From Ylistrum balloti (Eukaryota), in the NCBI RefSeq assembly GCF_031769215.1, contig NW_026782411.1:248001-312000 (forward strand): a stretch of DNA of 64,000 nt, in the 5' to 3' direction. The position numbers and the translations under genes are program-made. The number at the start of each line of letters is the position of its first letter. The first letter of the stretch is position 1. Under the pieces are notes generated by a model, which searched no databases, was not told where the DNA came from, and worked only from the letters and a program-made list of their open reading frames with translations. Below are positions 26,568-51,572 of the stretch, piece by piece.

Positions 26568-29564
26568 CTAAAACAGAAAAGGGTCAAAGACAATTTTAAC
26601 TAAAAAAACAGACTCTATAAATAATTTGTACCAACACGTGACCTCAATTTATAACCAAAAATATATAATTTGAGTCCAAAAATATCATATAATTGAAAAA
26701 CATACAAAACGAATATATTCCACCGGCGTCATACTACTAGGGCAGTCGTGCATCATCTTGTTGTGGTTGTATGTATAAATGTAACAGGTAATATTTGTTT
26801 GTCTCACAGTACGTTCACTTGTAGTTACTTCCAGTTATAATCCGATTTCCAGCTTTCTCACTTGATATGTATAGTTATGGTACACGTGTTTGTGCCTTTC
26901 AGTGTGAAGGTATCTGACTTCCAACTCTAACTACAAACCACATAGCTCCTTTCACTGCAGGACGAGAATGTTTTGACCATGACTATTTCAATGTTTTTGT
27001 TCTATTGCTGCTTTGGTAATATCCGTCCATTACAAGTGGTTTCCAAGCTTCTGTCTTCCATTCAGTTTACATGTGTTAGTCGTTAAACCCCATGGAAATA
27101 CTCACACTTTGTTGCCTCGTTTGTTAAAGATCCAGATTTCGATATGTTGGTGAATACCATCATACGTATAATCTTGCATTATTAGAAATGTGTGTTATTT
27201 TTGAAAATAAACACATTGACCGATGATTACAAAAAAATTAAACCAGTTTCCACACGTTTCGAACACGTCACATTGAAATATCCTCTTACAGTCTACCTAA
27301 CTAGTCATATTTTGTCACATGTACACATCTATAGTGGTTCCAAAGCTTCCCCTTCTACCATATACATGGAATGCATACATGAGATAAACTAATCACTATC
27401 TACAATATATAGAAATAAATACACGCCAAAGTTAGCAATTCATCGATCGAGCATACCCTTATACATCCGGTAATACTGGTTTTATGTAAAACGTGATAGA
27501 TGACATTTAAATATATATTAAATCGATCCAAACTTTTACTCAAACAGCTTTTACTATTAACGACGTATTCCCGAGATCTTCACACATAGGTGAATAAAGA
27601 CAGTTCGATATTAAATGTGATAATCAATTTGATTAATGGGCGCCTCCTTGTTGAACAACTCCGAAAAAAACATTCAAAGAATACAATTTCTGCAGCGACA
27701 AAAAGTAATCCAAGGTCTGGAGAGAAAAAAGTCTTTTATATATGTCTATGATATGATCATGTCCAATTTGAGAGATTGCGATGTGTTTACCGAAACTTAT
27801 GAATGTTTAATTTCACAAATATCGATAAGGCCGAGTCCTTTAATAACTTGCTCTGTGCTAAATCTAATAACCCTTTAGTTTGAGCTTCAACAAGCTGTCA
27901 ATATGGTCTGTGTTCTCTATTGAATAAGATATCTTGAGCAATGAATTTTGCAAGTTCGATTTTACTCTATTTGCCGATTTAACAAAGGCTTGAAGGACTG
28001 CTTCCTATGTAATTAACATCAACTAAATTCTCTACAATGCAGGGTAGCTAATAACCTGAATTCTCAACCACCTGTTATACATACCATGTAGCTATTGTGT
28101 GTATTCGACAAACGGTACACATATGTAGTAATTAAACCTATGTTTTTCTATGTTCAGATTCACTGGTTGAAACTTTATACATAACGTCTTGGGAGAAGAC
28201 TTATATAGGCTTTAGCTTGTTGTCTAATCATATTGATTGTTTATATCAATAAACTATTTTGAGGGCGAACTTTATACATTTTGCATGGTAATGAAATGAA
28301 TCCGATAAAAATAAAACCATGCATCAATCATGTTTGTTATATGATAAATCATTATATACAAACCTAGACGAGTACATGAATAGTTTAAGTACCCTGTTTG
28401 ATTAAATGACTTCTATACACAATGTTAGATATAAGGGCGTGTTTTCGTTAGAGTTAAGAAAAATAAACATGTCTTTCCTATTTATGTATCACAATATGAA
28501 GAAATCAATAACATCTAAAACCACCGAACATATTACATCTCGATAAGAGTATATTTCATGAAATTCCAAACCGATTTTATATATTCTTTTGAAAACATCA
28601 AACTTGCTTTTTTAGATTTTTAGAAATCATCACAGAGCACAAAAACGTATAAGCTTTCATCGAGAACGTATACGTTTATTACTTTTAACCGACATACATC
28701 TTTTGAAATGAAATTTATTTAATGTTTCGTCATGTATTAGCATTAAAATGTGTGCATATAGGTAGACATCAACTATACATTTTAGAAGTGCTAACATCGA
28801 TTTAATGGGTTTAAATGTATGCATACAAGTTGCTTTTAAAAACCAATTAAAGGTATGTTTACATACACAAAGATATCACAACTCGTAGTAGTGAACAACA
28901 TCAATTCCTCCCTAGTCATCAAATATTTATGGGTATAATAAATTGACAGGGAAACAGCGCCCAGTTACGAAAAAGATATCACAGGTATTGATGATAAGCG
29001 AAGTGGACGTAAAATTAACCAAAAACATCACAATATAATTCAAAGCTTTAAATTTTACAAACAAATTCACAGCTGTGAAGCGATAATGATTTATCTTAAA
29101 GATAAAATAGAAACAAGAAACAATATACCTGTTCAGTACGATTGTAAAACTATTCCAGATCCCTCAAACTGGAAAAATTTCATGAGGCTGAAACTTTACT
29201 TCAAAGACCAATGTTATTTTCTTCGGTTAATCAAACTTTTTCAAATATTGCAACTATGTTTTCCGGTTAATCTGAAAACATTGATCCTCCATCATACGAT
29301 GCTCATGGAAATATTGATATACTACTTACACGTTTACATGTCTTGGCGTCTAGTCAGAGTTTGCGAGTAATCCTTGAGTACAGTACAAATCTATTGCAGC
29401 ACGGCAACATCTAACACTTATATATGTTGGTGTATTATCCTAGCTTCCTTTGATAGTTATTATTTTTAGCAAATCAGTATGTAAATCATAAATACTTCAT
29501 ATAATTACTAATTAATCAATCAGTCTTCTTTTACGTCCCACAATGGTGTGTATAAAATAAAGAA

Positions 29565-29637
29565 GGGGTTCTGATCACCAGGCACCCGCCTTATATACGT
29601 GGTCGGAGGGCGACCTCTATTACACTGGACACACCTC
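29565..29637 (-). mobile_element. Possible decayed tRNA-SINE head
   Basis: Minus strand gaggtgtgtccagtgtaatagaggtcgccctcc...gcctggtgatcagaacccc; degenerate A and B boxes. Confidence 0.3.
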
Positions 29638-30441
29638 AATCAAGTTTGGTCATCTTAATAGCAATAAAGTATTCCCTAAATTGCAAAAAATAAACGTAGA
29701 GAGGAAAACATTTTACCTGACTACTGATTTTCTGTTTTCTGTTCTTTTTCCTACTTTTTCCTATTGGAGCAAAAGTTTTGATTAGTGTAAAGAAAAAACT
29801 GGTCGTTCACTCGGTTAAGTTGATGAAGTTAATACGAATCTCTTTTACTAAGTAATTGTAACTAATATTTCATACCGACATCGACTACAATAAAGGTTTC
29901 CACAACATCACCTAATAAGACAGATACAACGAAATATAAATCCTTAGACCGCACGTGCATCTATCATGCATAAAAGGCAAGATTAAGTATATATCCTAGA
30001 TATCGATCTTAAGGAATCAATTACCCCACAACGATAGAATCAGCCAATATTTAAATCCCTAATCGATAGCCTTATTTATACAGATTTAAAATAAGCCATA
30101 CTCGTAATGTTTCAAAAGTCATTTATAAGGGCAAGAAACCCCATGTTATGTAGATCTTATTTATTTAAAATATATCTGATTAATTTTTCTCCAAAGGTAC
30201 TTTATAGTTGTGTAACACCAAAAGCGTAACATTCTTTTAGCAAACTAGTTTACAGAAATGGACTTTGTCTGGTAGGTAGAGCTCCCACTTGCTAGATGTT
30301 GAGATATGATTAAGGTCTAGGTATAAGAAGAAAGCTCCAGAGAATGTTAAAACTTTTACTTAGCAGTTACTCATTGTGCATATTTTGTTTGTTCTTTGAT
30401 TTTGTTCTGTTGTTATCACTATTTTTTTCTGATTATTTATC

Positions 30442-30610
30442 NNNNNNNNNNNNNNNNNNNNNNNNNNNNNNNNNNNNNNNNNNNNNNNNNNNNNNNNNNN
30501 NNNNNNNNNNNNNNNNNNNNNNNNNNNNNNNNNNNNNNNNNNNNNNNNNNNNNNNNNNNNNNNNNNNNNNNNNNNNNNNNNNNNNNNNNNNNNNNNNNNN
30601 NNNNNNNNNN
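30442..30610. other. Assembly gap (169 N)
   Basis: Run of N. Confidence 1.
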
Positions 30611-34185: not shown

Positions 34186-36002
34186 CTAAATCACACAACA
34201 AAGTTGTGAACACATAGCATAGGCAACTTCTGAGCTCTGTAAAGGAACGATGATGTATTATTATGACAAAATCCTACTTCTACAAACAATGGTAAACAAA
34301 AGTGTGATCGGCCGATGTAGGCCTACTTGCAGTCGTTTCCAAGGTCTTCATCTTCCATATACATGTGAATTTGTCCATAAAATAAAACATTGTTATGACA
34401 CAATTATTACAAACCAGTCGTATTGGTTGTAGTATCGTTGTTTTTAAAGGCTGATCATTAAAAAAATAATAGTTTAGTAAGATCCATTAACGGAAAATAA
34501 TAGGCACTGTGTACTAACTGTAAAGGTTAACACTTTCACTCAAAGTAACAAACAAATGTCAAGTATATTGTGGTGAAATATCAAATATCCGTGCCGACAA
34601 TACAATAGAAAGGTCCACACAATTAGGCATTATTTGACCAGAACAACCCGCACACGAGTAAAGTATACAGTTATATAGTCAACATTAATTGATATAGTGG
34701 TATTTACCGCTACTGTAACATACATACCACTCTCATGTAAACCTCCAATCCTTTGTAATACACTAGTATGCTAAGTAAAACCCCGTTGGTTCAAGTACAT
34801 ATTCATTCACAGACTCAATAATGCATTACGGATTAATAACCATTTTGATACATTTCATTTCCCCCAGTTAAACCACCGTTCTGATATTAAAGCTTCGGAA
34901 CTTATAATATACAACACCTAAAGAATTAATTGTGTAGCAGATATGTATATGTTTTCTATGTATACTACACATTCATGTGATGATTGCCTCTACACTTATC
35001 ATGCTTTCTGTCTTACAGAAAGATTAAAATCCTATATTAAAGTATAAAATTCCCTAGATAGAAGCAGCACCAAAGTTTGTCTTGCTAACATAAATGTTAT
35101 TTCTATTACTTGTACGTAGGAAAACAAAGTAGAAATATAGCCTACATTCTCATTTTACATTGAGATTGTAATGTAAAGATTTAATTGGACGTCTATCAGG
35201 TCTGGAGGGTTATGTAAAGACTATTACCTACACTTTAACGTTGAGTTTAGTGTTGTAAATGTCATAGTGCGGTCCTAGGATCAATGAGAGGTGAATTTAA
35301 GTGTCGTTCCAGGCTACACTTTACACGTTTGGATGTGTTTCAATTCATATTTTAATACTCTCTGGAATTCGTGGGATATATAAATGAAAAGCAGAAAAAC
35401 ACATTCAATTGTGATTTAAACAGACAGGCATTTAGCAAATTAGACGAATAAAGCATAATGTATCAAGTTTCATGCGTAAAATCTGTCCAGATTTAAGTAC
35501 GTTTAAATGTTTTCTTTCTATAATCCCGAGCTCAGACGAAAATTGAGATCGTTGTCTCTGAAACATACGAATCAATGTAAAATATTTTGAACGGATGAAC
35601 AGGTAATGCTCACTACGATTAATGACCATCTATCATAAACAGTTTATTGGTCGTAAATTCCGTTGGACGGAAATGCAACTTAAGGCTCCCATATAAGTTT
35701 GTAAGATGAATGTACAGAGAGAACAAAAACCGATGTTGTAAGAACATATTGGATAGAGAACATCTGTTAAAAAGACACATGTGGTGGTAGTAATTGTTTG
35801 TCAAATCAGTTTTGAGGTTAAATGAATCCAGCGAGATTTGGATAAAAAAACAAACCCAGACATAGTAATATCTAAGCTTCATACTATGACTGTCCATTAT
35901 ATGTCATTTACATTTTCCAAACAAATAGTCAAGTTGTATAGCGAACTGTTTTACTTTGGAACATTTCTTAAGGTTGGTAATGTCAATAGAATTGAAGTTC
36001 AT

Positions 36003-36124
36003 ATAACACAACCAGTAGAGGATAGAGTGTGACGTTTCGATGACTACGCGGTCACCTTCATCTCATAACACAACAGTAGAAGATTAGAGTGTGACGTTTC
36101 GATGACTACGCGGTCACCTTCATC
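36003..36124. repeat. Tandem duplication (~62-bp period) of the hammerhead motif; the second copy has core GAGAUGA
   Basis: Two identical copies of tagagtgtgacgtttcgatgactacgcggtcaccttcatc, at ~36023-36062 and ~36085-36124. Confidence 0.95.
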
Positions 36125-36129
36125 AGACA
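36090..36129 (-). ncRNA. Minimal type I hammerhead ribozyme motif (Penelope-like-element type)
   Basis: Minus strand reads UGU-CUGAUGA-A-GGUGAC-cgcgua-GUCAUC-GAAA-C-GUC/ACA. It has an intact catalytic core, a 6-bp stem II (one G-U), palindromic ACGU in place of helix III, a GUC cleavage triplet (cut between 36093 and 36092) and a 3-bp stem I. Confidence 0.7.
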
Positions 36130-37329
36130 AATGACAAGTGTGGATCGTACTAGGCACTGACGTACGTAGTGCACGAGATGATATTCTAACGAACTGTTTT
36201 TGGTGATCCGTTTTCTAATTGAAAAGCAAAAATTTACAGAGATATGTAACATTTATAATTACTTCTTTAAGTAGTATTTTCAAACATAGGGTGTAGATGA
36301 ATGCCCCTGATAAAGGAATACGGGGTCAAAGAAGCTGATTTTAAGTACAATTATTGCATACACTGACCTTCCGCAATAAAAATAATTTTCCGATATATCA
36401 GCAAGGTTGAGCGGATGTATCAACAAGGACTGAAATGGCTGAAAGAATATTAGCACAAAAACATTTTTTCGGGGAAGTTTTACATACTCTTATTTAAATA
36501 TTGGACTGAAACTAGTGACATAGACAAATACATGTTATAAAGAGGTGGTCACAAGCTGCAGAATTGGGATGTCTAATAACTTTTCACCGAGGAGATTTTC
36601 CTATAGGAAAAAATGTAATCCAACTCTATTACGTTAAGAGACTTACATCTTTAGAGTCATTTCTTTATTTCTTTCTTTGTTTATTAAATCATCCATGTTA
36701 CTGTGATAGCCAAATATATGCCATACTGAAAGACATATCCCGAAACTTACATGTACATACCTTTACTCACACTACAAATATATTCTAAGACACGACATAC
36801 AAATTCTAGATCTATAAAATATATCAATGTCAAAGTTCAAAACATATCCCTATGGAGAAATAACAAATAGAAAATCCAAACAAACTAATAAAAAAATGCA
36901 AACTGATTTTTTATGCATTGAAAGTGTTAAAAAATATTATCCTGAACGTGAAAAAATGACGTGATCAAGATACAAACCCGTCAATTTCGTCATTCGAGCA
37001 CCAGAAATCCTTGTATGCTGTAGTCAGTAAGTTCCGGTCAAGGATGTGTTCGGACATATACATGGATCCCATATCGTCCCATTTACAACGCAAACAATCC
37101 GAAGGAAAAGATTGACCAATGATTAAATGTCCTTAAACTGGACAGCGTATATCTCGCCAACCAGATCGGATTCAAAGACCACATTCACAGTAGAATAAAT
37201 ACATACTTCATAACGGTATGTCAATACTAAACGTTCGATCTCTTATATATACAGTCCGCACCCTATATGTTCGTCCTCACTGGAGTCTTTATCAAACACA
37301 GGTTAAGTGGTGTATCTGTCCATCATAAT

Positions 37330-38150: not shown

Positions 38151-40597
38151 CAATCCCGAAGATCCCCTCACTTTCTGGAACAAATCTTCAGATTTCTGTT
38201 TTTTAAATCATAGCTATCCTGTAGATATGCAGGGATTCCAATAATTGATCCCTGTAGGGTGATAACGGATTGAGAAGCTACATATTTTCCCAGCTACTGT
38301 GGAATCCTCACGACAAACTACCGTAGAGTGATTTTTTAGATGGTGTTGTATCAGCAATTCTTTCAGAATTTTGTCCATAATAGAACTAATCACACAACAC
38401 AAATGTCAAAATAATATCCATTATCATCACAACAAATCCATCTGATTTTCTTTCAGTATCCATGATTTCCTTCGACTCATAACGGACTTCAGTCAATCGA
38501 GGTGTAACTAACTTTATATACACAAAGCTACACAATGAATTCCATTTTCCAATATACTTAAATCTGAACAATAGCTAGGCTAACAAACCACGGATACTTT
38601 ATCACAGTTTTTCCGCTATGTGGCTTCAATCAAAATATCTGATTAAGTTGAAAGTAGTTAGATACAGCTACAACCGTAATTTGACATTACTGAACTCATT
38701 TCAAAACAAATGTAACGTATAGGTAGAATTCCTTGTCGTTACTTGTACACATCTGGTAAATATGACGAATTTTAAACTAGAACTTTAGGCTGAAAGTCAC
38801 ATTCCAATAGTCCATTGTACTGTGTGTCGACAATAGGTGCCCAGAACAAAGGTTAATCAAAAAGTGCCAGATTTTCCTCGGCCAGTCATTAACTTGAAAT
38901 TACCTATGTAACAATACATGAAATAACATAATGTCCTCAATTCTTCCAACGAAACCTTTGATGCTCGCAATAAGCTAGCAAATTTATCCATATTACAGAC
39001 AGAAAACGTCCCAAATGGTGATTTATCTGCCATTCTATCTGTATGTATATGGTCAATGTTTGCGATTAGTCGTAACAATATACGCACGTGTCGCTATTTA
39101 TAATTTTTGTCACATATCCATAGACTGTCTATAACTGTACGTCATGGTGAATGCTCTTACAATTCCAGGTAGATTTACACTGTTGACAAAAGTACTGTGT
39201 CTTATTTTTATAACTTATCAAATATCAATCGTGGAAATATTGAGATAATGTTTTACACTATATGTATAATCCATAATATTAACAATTAGCCAATGCCTTG
39301 GGCGACAAAATGAGCCAGACAGTGCGAGACAAGTACACCCAAAGTCACCCTAGTTAGCACCACTGTGTGCAATAGCCCAGGAATTTATTTTTTTCAATCA
39401 TTCTGGTTAGAAAAGTGATCGGGTGATAAATTTAATCACATTTTAGATTTGAAACGATCAGAACTAAGGCCTTCATGTCGGTAATCACTCCGATAATCTA
39501 CAAACTCAAATTTAAAATTCTTCATTTCCTGTCTATGTTGGTAGATAAATAACGATAAAGGTTATACCATTCAAGCGTATTATCTCGTAGAACACAAAAT
39601 AACGTACTTATGTATTAAGAAAATTCAGCCAGATCCCTAACAGTATACACAATAATTATTGTTGTTAAGATACTTTTGACTTTCTTGTGAGCCAGAAAAA
39701 CGATAAGATGTGTAAACGTTAGCCTAGTATTATATCTAAATCAAAAATGATACTGGGAATGATGTTGTAAACCAGTTTACCAGTAAACTTATTCCGCCTA
39801 TTTCCGAGTTCTCGAGGATGGAATAAAGAAAAAACATTTATTGTCTTCCGTGAAAACTAATATTACACATATGATCAATTTTGGTAGCGTGCACCTTAAT
39901 TTGAATAATCTTGATAAAATTAAAAATCAAATATGGCATGCATAGGTTACCGGTGACTATTGTCACATTTAGTTTTTCACAATTTATATCGAAACAGGAG
40001 GCTAACTGGTGGTTATGTCGAGTTCCATTTACTCATTACTAACTAACGCAATCAAATCGGCCTGACTGGCATAATTATAAAGACTTGGCAAGAGAGAACA
40101 TGAACATCTGGGCCACAAAATACTCTATTGTCACAACAAATTATATCATATTGTGTGTCTGTAAATATGACAAATACTGTAACTTTAAGCAGGAGATGAT
40201 CAGGGCAAAATTGGGAAAGATACCTTTTTAATTTCCGTGACTCCTTATACAAAAAAGTATTATGGCATAGAATTTTTAGTTTGATTTAGTTTAATCTTTA
40301 GCATTTGTGTAACTTCAGGGAATACTATATAAGCTTTTGTGTTAATCTATGAAGCGCGCTTAATTACAGTATTGATACACATAAGAATGAAATTCTAATA
40401 CAAATGTATGCTTGTATCATTGCAGTAAATTAAAGTCTCTGTATGCGAGCATTTTAACAAAGTCGTAGAGGAATTCAACGTTCAGATCCTGGGAAATATT
40501 TAATAATGATAGGCGTTATTGTTGCCAGATAAACATTAAATGACTCTACAACAACATACTACCAGATATATTAAAATTAAAAATATATAAATAATAC

Positions 40598-40617: not shown

Positions 40618-42559
40618 GCCCAGTTTTAATCTGATAAAGAATCACATTTTGCACACGGATAAATTATCACTATGAAAACTAATACATCAATCATGTGATC
40701 GACTACACATATAATATAACAGGTAAAAAGGAATTTTGTTGACGTACATACTGATACGGCATTCCATAGTGCAAAGTGAATCGTCAGTCAATTGCAGGCA
40801 TTTACAACCAAACTCAACAGCCTGAACACGACGACTTAAGCATGCGTTTGTTAACTATTGGACTTTTTAATAAAGTGTCGATCCCTGACCTCTAGACCTT
40901 GGTTGCTCAAAAGTTAGTTAAGAGTTAACAGTTGGTAAGTGAAAATTCAAATTGCAACCACTGAAAAGACAAGAGTGTTAAATGCAAAATTAACACACAA
41001 ATTATATCAATCTGACTTGTTTCAACAAATCCACAATGTGAAACGACAAAGAATGTTTCCAATTTTCTTTACTTCATGTTTGAAGATTTTCACTAACATC
41101 TGACGATTTCTAACCAGCCTTTGAACAACCGAGGACAGGATGACAGGAGCTATATAGGTTTTTGTTATTGATGTAAACAAGACGGAAGTCACCCGGGAAC
41201 GCCACATGAAATTGATTATCTATTGGTTCATAAAGTTCAAACGTTTCTGTTGATAGACTTAAATGTTTAAGATATAAGGAGGTAACTCATATATAGTGAT
41301 TACATGTTCAAGGAGATGCTGAGAAATACTTAACCTACAATAGGCTTTTATGACTCAGTGTTTACTATAATGCAGACGTAATACAAGTACAAGATATATA
41401 TCATGTATCTCAATGCATGTGAAATGTGCAACACCTAGTATTCCTCCCCCTTCCTTAGTTTTTTTTTTTTCGATTTGTGCCTTCCTATTGATGTGTATCT
41501 ATTTGAATCTGTTTTTGGGAGTACGAAACCTTGATCAACCATATAAAGATTATATCTAAGGCATCTCCACGTCTTACTCTAGAAACAGGTTTTAACTTGA
41601 AACTTTTACGATAGAAATATAGAAAGTGTATTATAATTCTCACTTCACAGTTTGAATTGAATTCCTTTATCGTAACATTTTAGGTGCATTAGAGCATAAA
41701 ATCCGATATAACACATCTACAACATGATGTACTAATTGTCTGCCAAGCACTATACTCATCGTCACGGCAATATTCCCACAGCAAAAAGTGGCCCTTGTCT
41801 TATATGTTTAACACTCGAATGTAGATTATCAACGGTTTACAACCTTCCATTAATATGGCTACTTATGTAACGACTGGCCTTGTATGGGCTCAGACAAATC
41901 GAAAAGTCGTTTTAAACCAACATATTATCTTCCATTTAATCGTTTTTCTAAGTTGTAAATTTTCACTTGCCCTAATAAAAGATTTAAGTACTGTCCACTT
42001 TTACACTGCCTTCAAGGTTGCAAGTTCAAAAATATCACTGGGAACAAAGATTCATAACACCCTTCGATAACTTACTTGATTCAAAACCTGTCGAAAAACC
42101 TGCTCCAAAATACATTGAGGTACAATTAAGTAACACGGTAAATATACAGTACAGCTTATAATTGACTATATTACAGTTTGAATAAAGCTCTTCATATTCG
42201 AACATTACAAGAATTTGCTATAATATATATTTTTTGATAAAACTAGTATATCATGTCAAGTCCTCACTACAGTGTTTCCTTCCTTGTTTCATTACACATC
42301 ATTATTCATATTATTAATAAACAGCATTCTCGAAAGTCCTACTGACCTTATTGTCCGGAAGTCCTTGTCCAGGGTCTGAGTTCCCGTAGAAACCATTAGG
42401 ATGAGCTATCGCCCACTTGATAGCGCCTTGATTCTAGTCTCTTGCATTCACGTGTGATCTAGAAGATAAACCCGACATATATTTTTTAAGACATGTGATA
42501 TACGACCGGGGCACTGACACCAGATTTTGACAATGTTGAATATCAATACAAGTGATCCG

Positions 42560-51029: not shown

Positions 51030-51572
51030 ATGAATGTATTTGGAAAGATTACCAGGGCGCTAGGAAGCCGTCTTCTCACAGCAACTCCCAGACCTGTTAG
51101 AATACAACAGGCAATACCACAACCACCTGTGTCTAGTAGACATCAAGTTGGAGTACATTGTAAGGGATTATTTACTTGTCAGCAAGGCAGTCTGAGTCAT
51201 CGTATCAGTTCCCTTAACCTGAACAGTAGTAACGTTCATCATACATCCAGAGTGACAACACTGCTGACCACAAGCAACACCAACTTACAATTCACAAGAT
51301 CATACAAAGTGAAAAATGTGTTGACACTTCGTTGTTCAGGATGTTATTTTATTCGCAGACATGGACGGTTATTTGTTGAGTGTAAAGTAAAACCTAGACA
51401 TAAGCAAATGGCCAAAATTAGTAAGAACAAATTGATGGTAGATGACACTTCAAAAGGAAATGTGAAGAGAGCATGCTGGTGGAAGTTCCAAAAAGAAAGA
51501 TGGTACAAAAAGGGTCAGACTTCTTACGTCAAGTCGGGCTATTTCAATCAAGGCTTGGGTACAGATTTTTAG
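51030..51572 (+). CDS. MRPL36: Mitochondrial large-subunit ribosomal protein bL36m (39S ribosomal protein L36), 180 aa, intronless CDS
   Basis: bL36 domain [36 protein letters not shown] with C-x2-C...C...H zinc ligands, preceded by a long Arg/Ser/Thr-rich, acid-free presequence. Acceptor cattattttcag| lies at 51003, 26 nt before the ATG. Confidence 0.95.

What the first reader, a model, noticed from the sequence alone, without database searches (positions are those of the whole stretch)
36003..36129. Tandem minimal hammerhead ribozymes in the sense strand of a host-gene intron
Seen: the minus strand reads ...UUUGU CUGAUGA A GGUGAC cgcgua GUCAUC GAAA C GUC/ACACUC, with a second copy ~62 nt downstream whose core is changed to GAGAUGA but whose stem II, GAAACGUC and ACAC flank are identical. 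Known: Penelope-like elements carry minimal type I hammerheads whose helix III is replaced by a short palindrome (here ACGU), so they work as tandem dimers. Inference: the intact core of the first copy could pair ACGU:ACGU with the second copy and cleave at the second GUC (between 36031 and 36030). The pair lies on the transcribed strand of the predicted intron 40597-34186 of the FAM217-like gene, so it could cut the pre-mRNA co-transcriptionally and affect splicing or output. Stem I is only 3 bp, so activity may be weak.
Basis: partly seen in the sequence, partly recalled or inferred. Interest (0 to 1): 0.75.

Follow-up and report, generated by a model that had tools for sequence, protein, structure and literature searches.

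The report
Truncated Penelope retroelement tail with hammerhead
The motif is real, but it is the 237-bp tail end of an old Penelope-like retrotransposon carrying that family's usual minimal hammerhead plus a partial DNA duplicate that never had a full catalytic core, so it is an ordinary mobile-element fossil with no evidence that it cuts the host gene's RNA.

Summary
On the minus strand, unit 1 (36126-36093) reads CUGAUGA-A-GGUGAC-loop-GUCAUC-GAAA-CGUC. A second unit 62 nt downstream (36064-36031) reads GAGAUGA.

[quoted passage not shown] The element is a 5'-truncated PLE insertion (about 36189-35953) flanked by an 11-bp target-site duplication. Longer copies elsewhere in the genome carry a decayed RT-like plus GIY-YIG endonuclease frame about 190 nt upstream of the hammerhead. 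The family also shows graded 5' truncation, head-to-head inverted pairs and two discrete 3' ends 33 nt apart, which is the PLE "tail".

Most copies have one hammerhead. The 62-63-nt arrays arose by DNA duplication whose junction leaves out core positions C3 and U4, so unit 2 is not a ribozyme.

Only one composite active site is possible (unit 1 core cutting at 36031|36030). It has a 3-bp helix I and is predicted 22.6 kcal/mol above the minimum-energy fold.

No RNA data exist, and the intron assignment is unverified.

The scan reached a similar verdict on another piece of this genome (s1-240642).

The parts
36190..36200 (-). 5' copy of the 11-bp target-site duplication AAAACAGTTCG
   Evidence: Exact 11-nt direct repeat with 35952-35942 (sequence). 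The control flank gave no match.
36184..36189 (-). 6 nt between the 5' duplication and the first base that aligns confidently with the family (filler or diverged element sequence)
   Evidence: Family homology starts at about 36184/36183. The alignment further upstream is weak.
36127..36183 (-). Last ~57 nt of the PLE 3' untranslated region ('5' arm'); its end UGU (36129-36127) is the 5' strand of helix I
   Evidence: Aligns with the conserved arm of about 30 other copies.
36093..36126 (-). Unit 1: complete minimal hammerhead motif (CUGAUGA, bulged A, 6-bp stem II, GAAA, CG, UC); nominal cleavage after C36093
   Evidence: It is one of 94 exact copies of this 34-nt motif in the genome.
36065..36092 (-). 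28-nt linker following unit 1 (starts ACAC, ends GUGUUAU)
36031..36064 (-). Unit 2: partial duplicate with GAGAUGA in place of CUGAUGA (G3, A4), intact stem II and GAAACGUC. It can serve only as substrate; the possible cut is after C36031.
36003..36030 (-). Second linker; ACA 36030-36028 is the 3' strand of the only possible helix I
35987..36002 (-). 3' arm up to the family's short 3' terminus (AUGAACUUCAAUUCUA here; AAGAACTTCTATTCTA in most copies)
   Evidence: 8 other loci end at exactly this point.
35953..35986 (-). Optional 33-34-nt PLE 'tail', ending ..GUUCCAAAG(U)
   Evidence: About 27 loci carry it and lose homology just after ..GTTCCAAAA. It matches the 30-40 bp optional tail described in PMC11167929.
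35942..35952 (-). 3' copy of the target-site duplication AAAACAGTTCG

Best explanation
Window 36189-35953 (minus strand) is a fossil, 5'-truncated insertion of a Penelope-like retrotransposon (PLE).

What was copied. Target-primed reverse transcription copied only the last ~240 nt of the element RNA into this site and produced an 11-bp target-site duplication. That terminal piece normally contains one minimal, helix-III-less type I hammerhead. It lies about 190 nt after the stop codon of the RT-endonuclease ORF and 47-80 nt before the 3' end.

Origin of unit 2. In the lineage that gave this copy, a 62-63-nt segment had been duplicated at the DNA level. The segment runs from U7 of the core to the first four bases of the 3' arm. 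The second and later units therefore start A/G-A-G-A-UGA and lack C3 and U4.

Consequences (inferred). Unit 1 still matches the family's intact motif, as expected by chance for roughly 6% of copies at this age. Unit 2 is catalytically dead. At most one composite active site could form: the unit 1 core, ACGU:ACGU as helix III, and a 3-bp helix I, cutting after C36031. It is expected to be inactive or very weak. I infer no role in the host gene.
For: 1. Dispersed family. There are at least 134 BLAST matches, with arrays of more than 20 units. 640 exact copies of the core-stem-GAAACGTC string occur, of which 94 start with CT. Repeat bins are 2,600-4,400 times single-copy depth in DNA-like contigs.

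2. CTGATGA occurs once per array, at the first unit next to the conserved arm. Internal units read AAGATGA, GAGATGA or ATGATGA.

3. In an unbiased sample chosen by arm homology, 18 of 21 first units start with CT and 13 of 21 copies have a single unit.

4. The internal junction TTAT-AAGA-TGAAGG equals the start of the 3' arm (TTAT-AAGA-ACTTC) joined to the core after CTGA. The ATGA sub-variant behaves the same way.

5. PLE hallmarks:
- Graded 5' ends from -229 to -820.
- Head-to-head inverted pairs in 6 of 31 loci.
- Two discrete 3' ends 33 nt apart, matching the PLE tail (PMC11167929).
- The target-site duplication at this copy.

6. Coding link:
- L063:1010-1363 upstream of the hammerhead has at least 150 genomic homologues.
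- Two of these overlap PF01541 GIY-YIG hits above cut-off.
- Database homologues P0002 and P0003 score 28.7 and 27.4 bits on PF01541.
- An RT-like piece with a YVDD motif (L079) lies 250-640 nt upstream of the endonuclease in the same open frames of 405-587 aa.
- The order endonuclease, then about 400 nt, then hammerhead is seen at C3, C198 (twice), C766, C491, C1068 and C217.

7. Unit 1 has the bulged base between positions 9 and 10.1, the G10.1-C11.1 pair, the palindromic 15.2-16.2 pair, a long helix II and a short helix I. These are the features listed for PLE minimal hammerheads (PMC4209133).

8. The dimer-hammerhead structure scores -10.1 kcal/mol against an MFE of -32.7. Helices III and I add +3.1 kcal/mol over the two stem II hairpins alone.

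9. A C3G change abolishes a PLE hammerhead (PMC11167929).
Against: - No cleavage assay and no RNA data exist, so weak activity of the asymmetric dimer cannot be excluded.
- Nearest-neighbour energies ignore tertiary contacts, co-transcriptional folding and the protein assistance reported for one PLE hammerhead.
- RT identity rests on motifs seen by eye. Pfam and PDB searches of the decayed fragments gave nothing.
- Exact target-site duplications were not found at 14 other old copies with my crude search.
- Both units here share the loop CGCGUA, seen at no other of the 94 exact copies. The history of this particular dimer (inherited or locally homogenised) is not resolved.
Confidence: 0.85

Rival explanations
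1. One reading: an active asymmetric dimeric hammerhead, sitting in sense orientation in an intron of the FAM217-like gene, cuts the pre-mRNA co-transcriptionally at 36031|36030 and modulates splicing or output.
For: - Unit 1 is an intact minimal hammerhead motif and unit 2 supplies ACGU and GUC, so the topology is possible.
- The element and the coding exon at 34185-33955 are both on the minus strand.
- A GT at 40597 and an AG at 34187-34186 would join two open pieces in frame (read by eye, not joined in any tool).
Against: - Helix I is 3 bp and helix III 4 bp, formed across 62 nt. The structure is 22.6 kcal/mol above the MFE, with Boltzmann weight about 1e-18.
- True dimers and trimers of PLE minimal hammerheads cleave only weakly and mostly at non-physiological Mg2+ (PMC4209133). 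One PLE hammerhead needs its own protein, and no reads end at its site in vivo (PMC11167929).
- An intact unit 1 is expected by neutral survival: 94 exact copies against about 1,560 first-look candidates for the arm.
- The 40.6-kb exon has no RNA support and no RNA run exists. The element may simply lie 1.8 kb upstream of the first coding exon.
Confidence: 0.05
2. A chance look-alike: a dispersed repeat whose hairpin and GAAAC happen to sit next to CUGAUGA, unrelated to hammerheads.
For: - Rfam hammerhead models give no hit.
- Only the junction unit carries CUGAUGA.
- There is no helix III.
- Copies decay neutrally.
Against: - The motif lies in the 3' untranslated region of a PLE, exactly where PLE hammerheads are described.
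- It shows four features that were not part of the published search descriptor: the bulge at 9/10.1, G10.1-C11.1, the palindromic 15.2-16.2 pair and a long helix II (PMC4209133).
- 0 hits in 300 simulated windows.
- 18 of 21 first units in the unbiased sample start with CT.
Confidence: 0.04
3. A retrozyme-like or satellite element: the 62-nt units are transcribed as multimers, self-cleave and circularise, spreading as small circular RNAs.
For: - Tandem arrays of up to more than 20 units exist.
- Animal retrozymes are proposed to derive from PLE terminal repeats (bioRxiv 10.64898/2026.07.22.740005).
- A few arrays (C176/L055, C331, C702) keep CUGAUGA in consecutive 61-62-nt units.
Against: - 85% of exact units lack C3/U4.
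- The junction shows DNA-level duplication.
- Arrays carry locus-specific variants, which points to local expansion.
- Most insertions have one unit, PLE-type ends and 5' truncation.
- The window copy has a target-site duplication typical of reverse-transcribed linear RNA.
Confidence: 0.04

Closest known systems
Minimal hammerhead ribozymes (min-HHR) of metazoan Penelope-like elements (Cervera & de la Pena 2014, PMC4209133; Lunse, Weinberg & Breaker 2017, cited through PMC6765202)
   Same: - Type I topology, with no helix III or loop 3.
- Palindromic ACGU able to pair with a second copy.
- Unpaired base between positions 9 and 10.1, and a G10.1-C11.1 pair.
- 6-bp helix II and a short helix I.
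- Located in the non-coding end of a PLE.
- Most genomic copies are solitary motifs in truncated elements.
   Different: - Helix I is 3 bp, against the usual 4-5 (2 bp in D. virilis).
- The neighbouring 'second copy' is not a second ribozyme but a partial duplicate lacking C3 and U4, so only one of the two dimer active sites can exist.
Penelope-like elements with a C-terminal GIY-YIG endonuclease, and their 3' 'tail' (Frangieh et al. 2024, PMC11167929)
   Same: - RT-like then GIY-YIG frame.
- Hammerhead near the 3' end of insertions.
- Optional extension of about 33 nt giving two discrete 3' ends.
- 5' truncation, head-to-head inverted copies and a target-site duplication.
   Different: - The clade (Neptune, Nematis, Poseidon and others) was not determined.
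- In the green-anole element the hammerhead overlaps the ORF start. Here it lies about 190 nt after the stop codon, and I could not see a full tandem copy.
- The tail region has seeded 62-63-nt satellites.
Non-LTR retrozymes and hammerhead satellites of animals (newt satellite 2, Schistosoma Sm-alpha, metazoan retrozymes; PMC7229834)
   Same: Tandem repeats carrying type I hammerhead sequence, thought to act as dimers and probably derived from PLE terminal repeats.
   Different: Retrozyme units are 170-400 nt, each with a complete ribozyme, and give circular RNAs. Here the units are 62 nt, mostly without a complete core, and they grew by DNA duplication.

Membership tests
Hammerhead ribozyme, PLE minimal type (min-HHR) | Conserved core boxes C3-U4-G5-A6-N7-G8-A9 and G12-A13-A14, with a cleavage triplet ending U16.1-H17 | tested here: met
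   Unit 1 has CUGAUGA, GAAA and GUC. Unit 2 does not meet this: it reads GAGAUGA (G3, A4).
Hammerhead ribozyme, PLE minimal type (min-HHR) | Helix II closed by G10.1-C11.1, usually long (6-8 bp), with one unpaired base between positions 9 and 10.1 | tested here: met
   A36119 is the bulge. GGUGAC pairs with GUCAUC over 6 bp with one G-U, in both units. The criteria are from PMC4209133.
Hammerhead ribozyme, PLE minimal type (min-HHR) | No helix III hairpin; positions 15.2-16.2 are complementary so that A-C-G-U can pair with a second copy | tested here: met
   GAAA-CG-UC in both units.
Hammerhead ribozyme, PLE minimal type (min-HHR) | Helix I of about 4-5 bp | tested here: inconclusive
   Only 3 bp (UGU:ACA) here and in the family's common sequence. 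2 bp is reported for D. virilis.
Hammerhead ribozyme, PLE minimal type (min-HHR) | A second complete motif nearby, so that a two-site dimer can form | tested here: not met
   Unit 2 lacks C3 and U4. No other descriptor hit exists in the 64-kb window.
Hammerhead ribozyme, PLE minimal type (min-HHR) | Self-cleavage at the predicted site | not testable with these tools
   No RNA run is held. The energy model disfavours the fold.
Penelope-like element (PLE) | ORF with reverse transcriptase followed by a GIY-YIG endonuclease | tested here: met
   At family level only; the window copy has no ORF. GIY-YIG is supported. The RT-like piece sits in the same open frames. RT identity rests on the YVDD and MG..SP motifs, with no profile hit.
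Penelope-like element (PLE) | Optional 30-40 bp 3' 'tail', giving two discrete 3' ends | tested here: met
   8 loci end after ..TTCTATTCTA and about 27 end 33 nt later. The window copy has the long form.
Penelope-like element (PLE) | Variable 5' truncation, inverted head-to-head copies and a target-site duplication | tested here: met
   An exact target-site duplication was found only for the window copy.
Animal non-LTR retrozyme | Tandem units that each hold a complete hammerhead and yield circular RNA | tested here: not met
   Internal units lack C3/U4. Circular RNA is not testable here.

The most novel reading that the evidence does not exclude
The single intact core at the head of a run of core-less but substrate-competent units could act as an asymmetric cis-nuclease. 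It would pair its ACGU with any downstream unit and cut there. In sense-oriented intronic copies such as this one, that would trim host pre-mRNA. This would be a new way for a decayed retroelement tail to affect a gene.
Probability: 0.04. Interest if true: 0.6.

Novelty: new member of a known kind. Interest (0 to 1): 0.18.

Why it matters
It matters little for the host gene. The finding is a tidy example of facts already known: PLE tails carry minimal hammerheads, most genomic copies are truncated and decaying, and such tails can seed short satellites.

Two points are useful. First, the duplication junction shows that the 62-63-nt satellite units of this genome are not degenerate ribozymes but partial copies that never had C3 and U4. 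Motif-based ribozyme counts would otherwise over-call them. Second, the family offers rare arrays (C176, C331, C702) with a complete minimal hammerhead in consecutive 61-62-nt units, which would be better substrates for testing dimer cleavage than the window copy.

Tried and rejected
- Rfam at gathering threshold and at E<=10 gave no hammerhead hit. I rejected this as evidence against, because the motif lacks helix III.
- The search for RNA runs listed none. The only holder, X1, behaves like DNA, with flat depth of 9-11 over exon and non-exon, and contigs break at the repeat. No transcript ends could be read.
- Pfam on the decayed ORF pieces gave nothing, as did PDB sequence searches.
- A tblastn against phage records was pointless and empty.
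- The protein Atlas was busy.
I did not try to pull those letters by another route.
- An exact-match search for target-site duplications at 14 other copies found none. These copies are old, about 80-85% identical.
- I first took the conserved '5' arm' for a short non-autonomous element with a sharp 5' end at -266. That was an artefact of using L046, which has an inverted 82-nt segment, as query.
- Lunse et al. 2017 is not held.
The in-frame reading of the proposed 40.6-kb exon with the 34.2-kb exon was by eye only.
- The report gives no repaired frame and no full consensus of the element. A script and the alignment tool did print majority-consensus lines during the work.

Full report
**Observation**

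- Unit 1 is CUGAUGA (36126-36120), an extra A (36119), GGUGAC (36118-36113), loop CGCGUA, GUCAUC (36106-36101), GAAA (36100-36097) and CGUC (36096-36093).
- Unit 2, 62 nt downstream, has GAGAUGA (36064-36058) and then the same stem II and GAAACGUC (36038-36031).
- Tandem Repeats Finder reports two 62-nt copies at 95% identity.
- Helix I can only be UGU (36129-36127) with ACA.
- Rfam finds no hammerhead at the gathering threshold or at E<=10. I infer this is expected because these models contain a helix III hairpin.
- A script encoding the published minimal-hammerhead descriptor finds this one site in the 64-kb window and none in 300 first-order Markov simulations.

The motif is therefore real and not a chance match at window scale.

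**What the surrounding DNA is**

The unit belongs to a large dispersed family in the window's own genome (648 Mb).
- There are at least 134 BLAST matches, with arrays of more than 20 units.
- There are 640 exact copies of GATGAAGGTGAC-loop-GTCATCGAAACGTC, of which only 94 begin with CT.
- In DNA-like contigs of a public run, the two repeat bins have 2,600-4,400 times the single-copy depth.
- Homology between the window copy and other copies runs from about 36184 to about 35952.
- The copy is flanked by an exact 11-bp direct repeat, AAAACAGTTCG, at 36200-36190 and 35952-35942. This is a target-site duplication.

**The family is a Penelope-like element (PLE)**

Upstream homology among copies ends at graded positions from -229 to -820 relative to the hammerhead. 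That is the pattern of 5' truncation.

The longest copies in hand (L063, L079, L089) carry decayed coding sequence.
- One 118-aa piece (L063:1010-1363) contains VYKI..C....IRET.R..G.RLKEH.
- It has at least 150 homologues in the genome, with open frames up to 587 aa.
- Two of those places coincide with PF01541 GIY-YIG hits above the curated cut-off (C500 and C469).
- Its database homologues P0002 and P0003 score 28.7 and 27.4 bits on PF01541.
- An RT-like piece with MG..SP and YVDD motifs (L079:2434-2862) has homologues 250-640 nt upstream of the endonuclease homologues, in the same open frames of 405-587 aa.
- Read against P0002 and P0003, the frame continues through what I first called the 5' arm and stops about 190 nt before the hammerhead (by eye).
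- The order endonuclease, then about 400 nt, then hammerhead, on one strand, is seen at seven loci.

Three further PLE signatures are present.
- Head-to-head inverted copies occur in 6 of 31 loci.
- There are two discrete 3' ends 33 nt apart: 8 short and about 27 long. This corresponds to the optional 30-40 bp "tail" explained by two reverse-transcription start sites (PMC11167929).
- The target-site duplication described above.

The window copy has the long form.

**The hammerhead**

In a sample chosen by arm homology, and so unbiased for the core, 18 of 21 first units start with CT. Individual copies carry scattered mutations.

The ancestral first unit was therefore a complete motif. It has the unpaired base between positions 9 and 10.1, the G10.1-C11.1 pair, a 6-bp helix II, the palindromic 15.2-16.2 pair and a short helix I. 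Cervera and de la Pena list these traits as emerging from PLE minimal hammerheads beyond their search descriptor (PMC4209133).

I accept unit 1 as a member of that class on sequence grounds. Cleavage is untested.

**Unit 2 and the arrays**

In that same sample, 13 of 21 copies have a single unit, so arrays are secondary.

Within arrays, CTGATGA occurs once, at the first unit. Internal units read AAGATGA, GAGATGA or ATGATGA.

The 3' arm begins TTAT-AAGA-ACTTC (ATGA in a sub-variant, as in the window) and the internal junction is TTAT-AAGA-TGAAGG. The repeat therefore arose by duplication of a segment running from U7 of the core to the first four bases of the 3' arm, with GA as microhomology. 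C3 and U4 were never part of it.

Locus-specific loop variants within arrays point to local expansion. Unit 2 of the window is such a partial copy. The change of C3 to G alone abolishes a PLE hammerhead (PMC11167929).

**Could the pair still cut?**

In a dimer of type I motifs, each active site combines the core, helix II and GAAA of one unit with the GUC and helix I 3' strand of the other. This is my derivation, consistent with Forster et al. 1988 as cited in PMC4209133.

That site needs a 4-bp ACGU:ACGU helix and a 3-bp helix I formed across 62 nt.
- ViennaRNA gives -13.2 kcal/mol for the two stem II hairpins alone.
- It gives -10.1 kcal/mol for the full dimer hammerhead.
- The minimum-energy fold, in which the two near-palindromic stem II segments pair with each other, is -32.7 kcal/mol.

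Published minimal hammerheads cleave poorly even as true dimers or trimers (PMC4209133; review PMC6765202). One PLE hammerhead needed its own protein and left no read ends in vivo (PMC11167929).

An intact unit 1 is not evidence of selection. The 94 exact copies, against about 1,560 first-look candidates for the arm, fit neutral survival of a 34-nt string at about 8-10% divergence.

**Host gene**

The coding exon at 34185-33955 is on the minus strand, and a GT at 40597 and an AG at 34187-34186 exist. The 40.6-kb exon is a guess.
- No RNA run is on record.
- The one run laid is DNA-like contigs.

The element may be intronic, or it may lie 1.8 kb upstream of the first coding exon. This cannot be decided here.

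**Comparison and verdict**

This is a new member of a known kind: a truncated PLE tail with its minimal hammerhead and one partial duplicate. It is not a retrozyme, because the units lack cores and arose by DNA-level duplication.

An earlier follow-up in this scan, on another piece of the same genome (s1-240642), reached the same kind of verdict: inverted Penelope tails turned into satellites, with ribozyme copies mostly broken. My work arrives at it independently for this family and adds the duplication junction and the coding link.

Interest is low. The most novel reading not excluded, an asymmetric cis-nuclease trimming a host intron, I put at about 4%.

Noticed in passing
L055/L056 (G000:C176 about 29,000-29,700); also C331:884891-885107 and C702:564103-564260: Arrays of a different 61-62-nt unit, formed by joining ..TAATCT to the arm's ..ACACTGGTCATTTGT. 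In L055 most 61-nt units keep a complete CUGAUGA core plus the helix I 5' strand. These are true tandem minimal hammerheads and are better candidates for dimer cleavage than the window copy.
   Followed up: partly
L070, L080, L090 (C968:23461-23656, C198:810848-810970) and L048 (C129): Other satellites seeded from the same PLE tail. One has a ~73-nt unit made of the arm's end plus the first half of the hammerhead. Another has a 33-nt unit containing CUGAUGA and half of stem II.
   Followed up: no
L046/L061 (G000:C117 about 41,200-41,330): In this copy an 82-nt segment of the ORF's C-terminal region is inverted relative to all other copies. Upstream of it lies a local repeat array (matched pieces of about 160 bp) running to at least 44.5 kb on that contig.
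   Followed up: partly
window 51030-51572 (+): A 180-aa ORF ending ..[26 protein letters not shown].. looks by eye like mitochondrial ribosomal protein L36. It is a separate plus-strand gene about 10 kb beyond the proposed first exon of the FAM217-like gene.
   Followed up: no
window about 30440-30610: A run of N (assembly gap or masked stretch), left untouched.
   Followed up: no
window 36118-36101 and 36056-36039 (-): Both units of the window copy share the loop CGCGUA. All other 93 exact genomic copies of the motif have a different loop, mostly CGTGTA. This suggests a private sub-lineage or local homogenisation between the two units.
   Followed up: no
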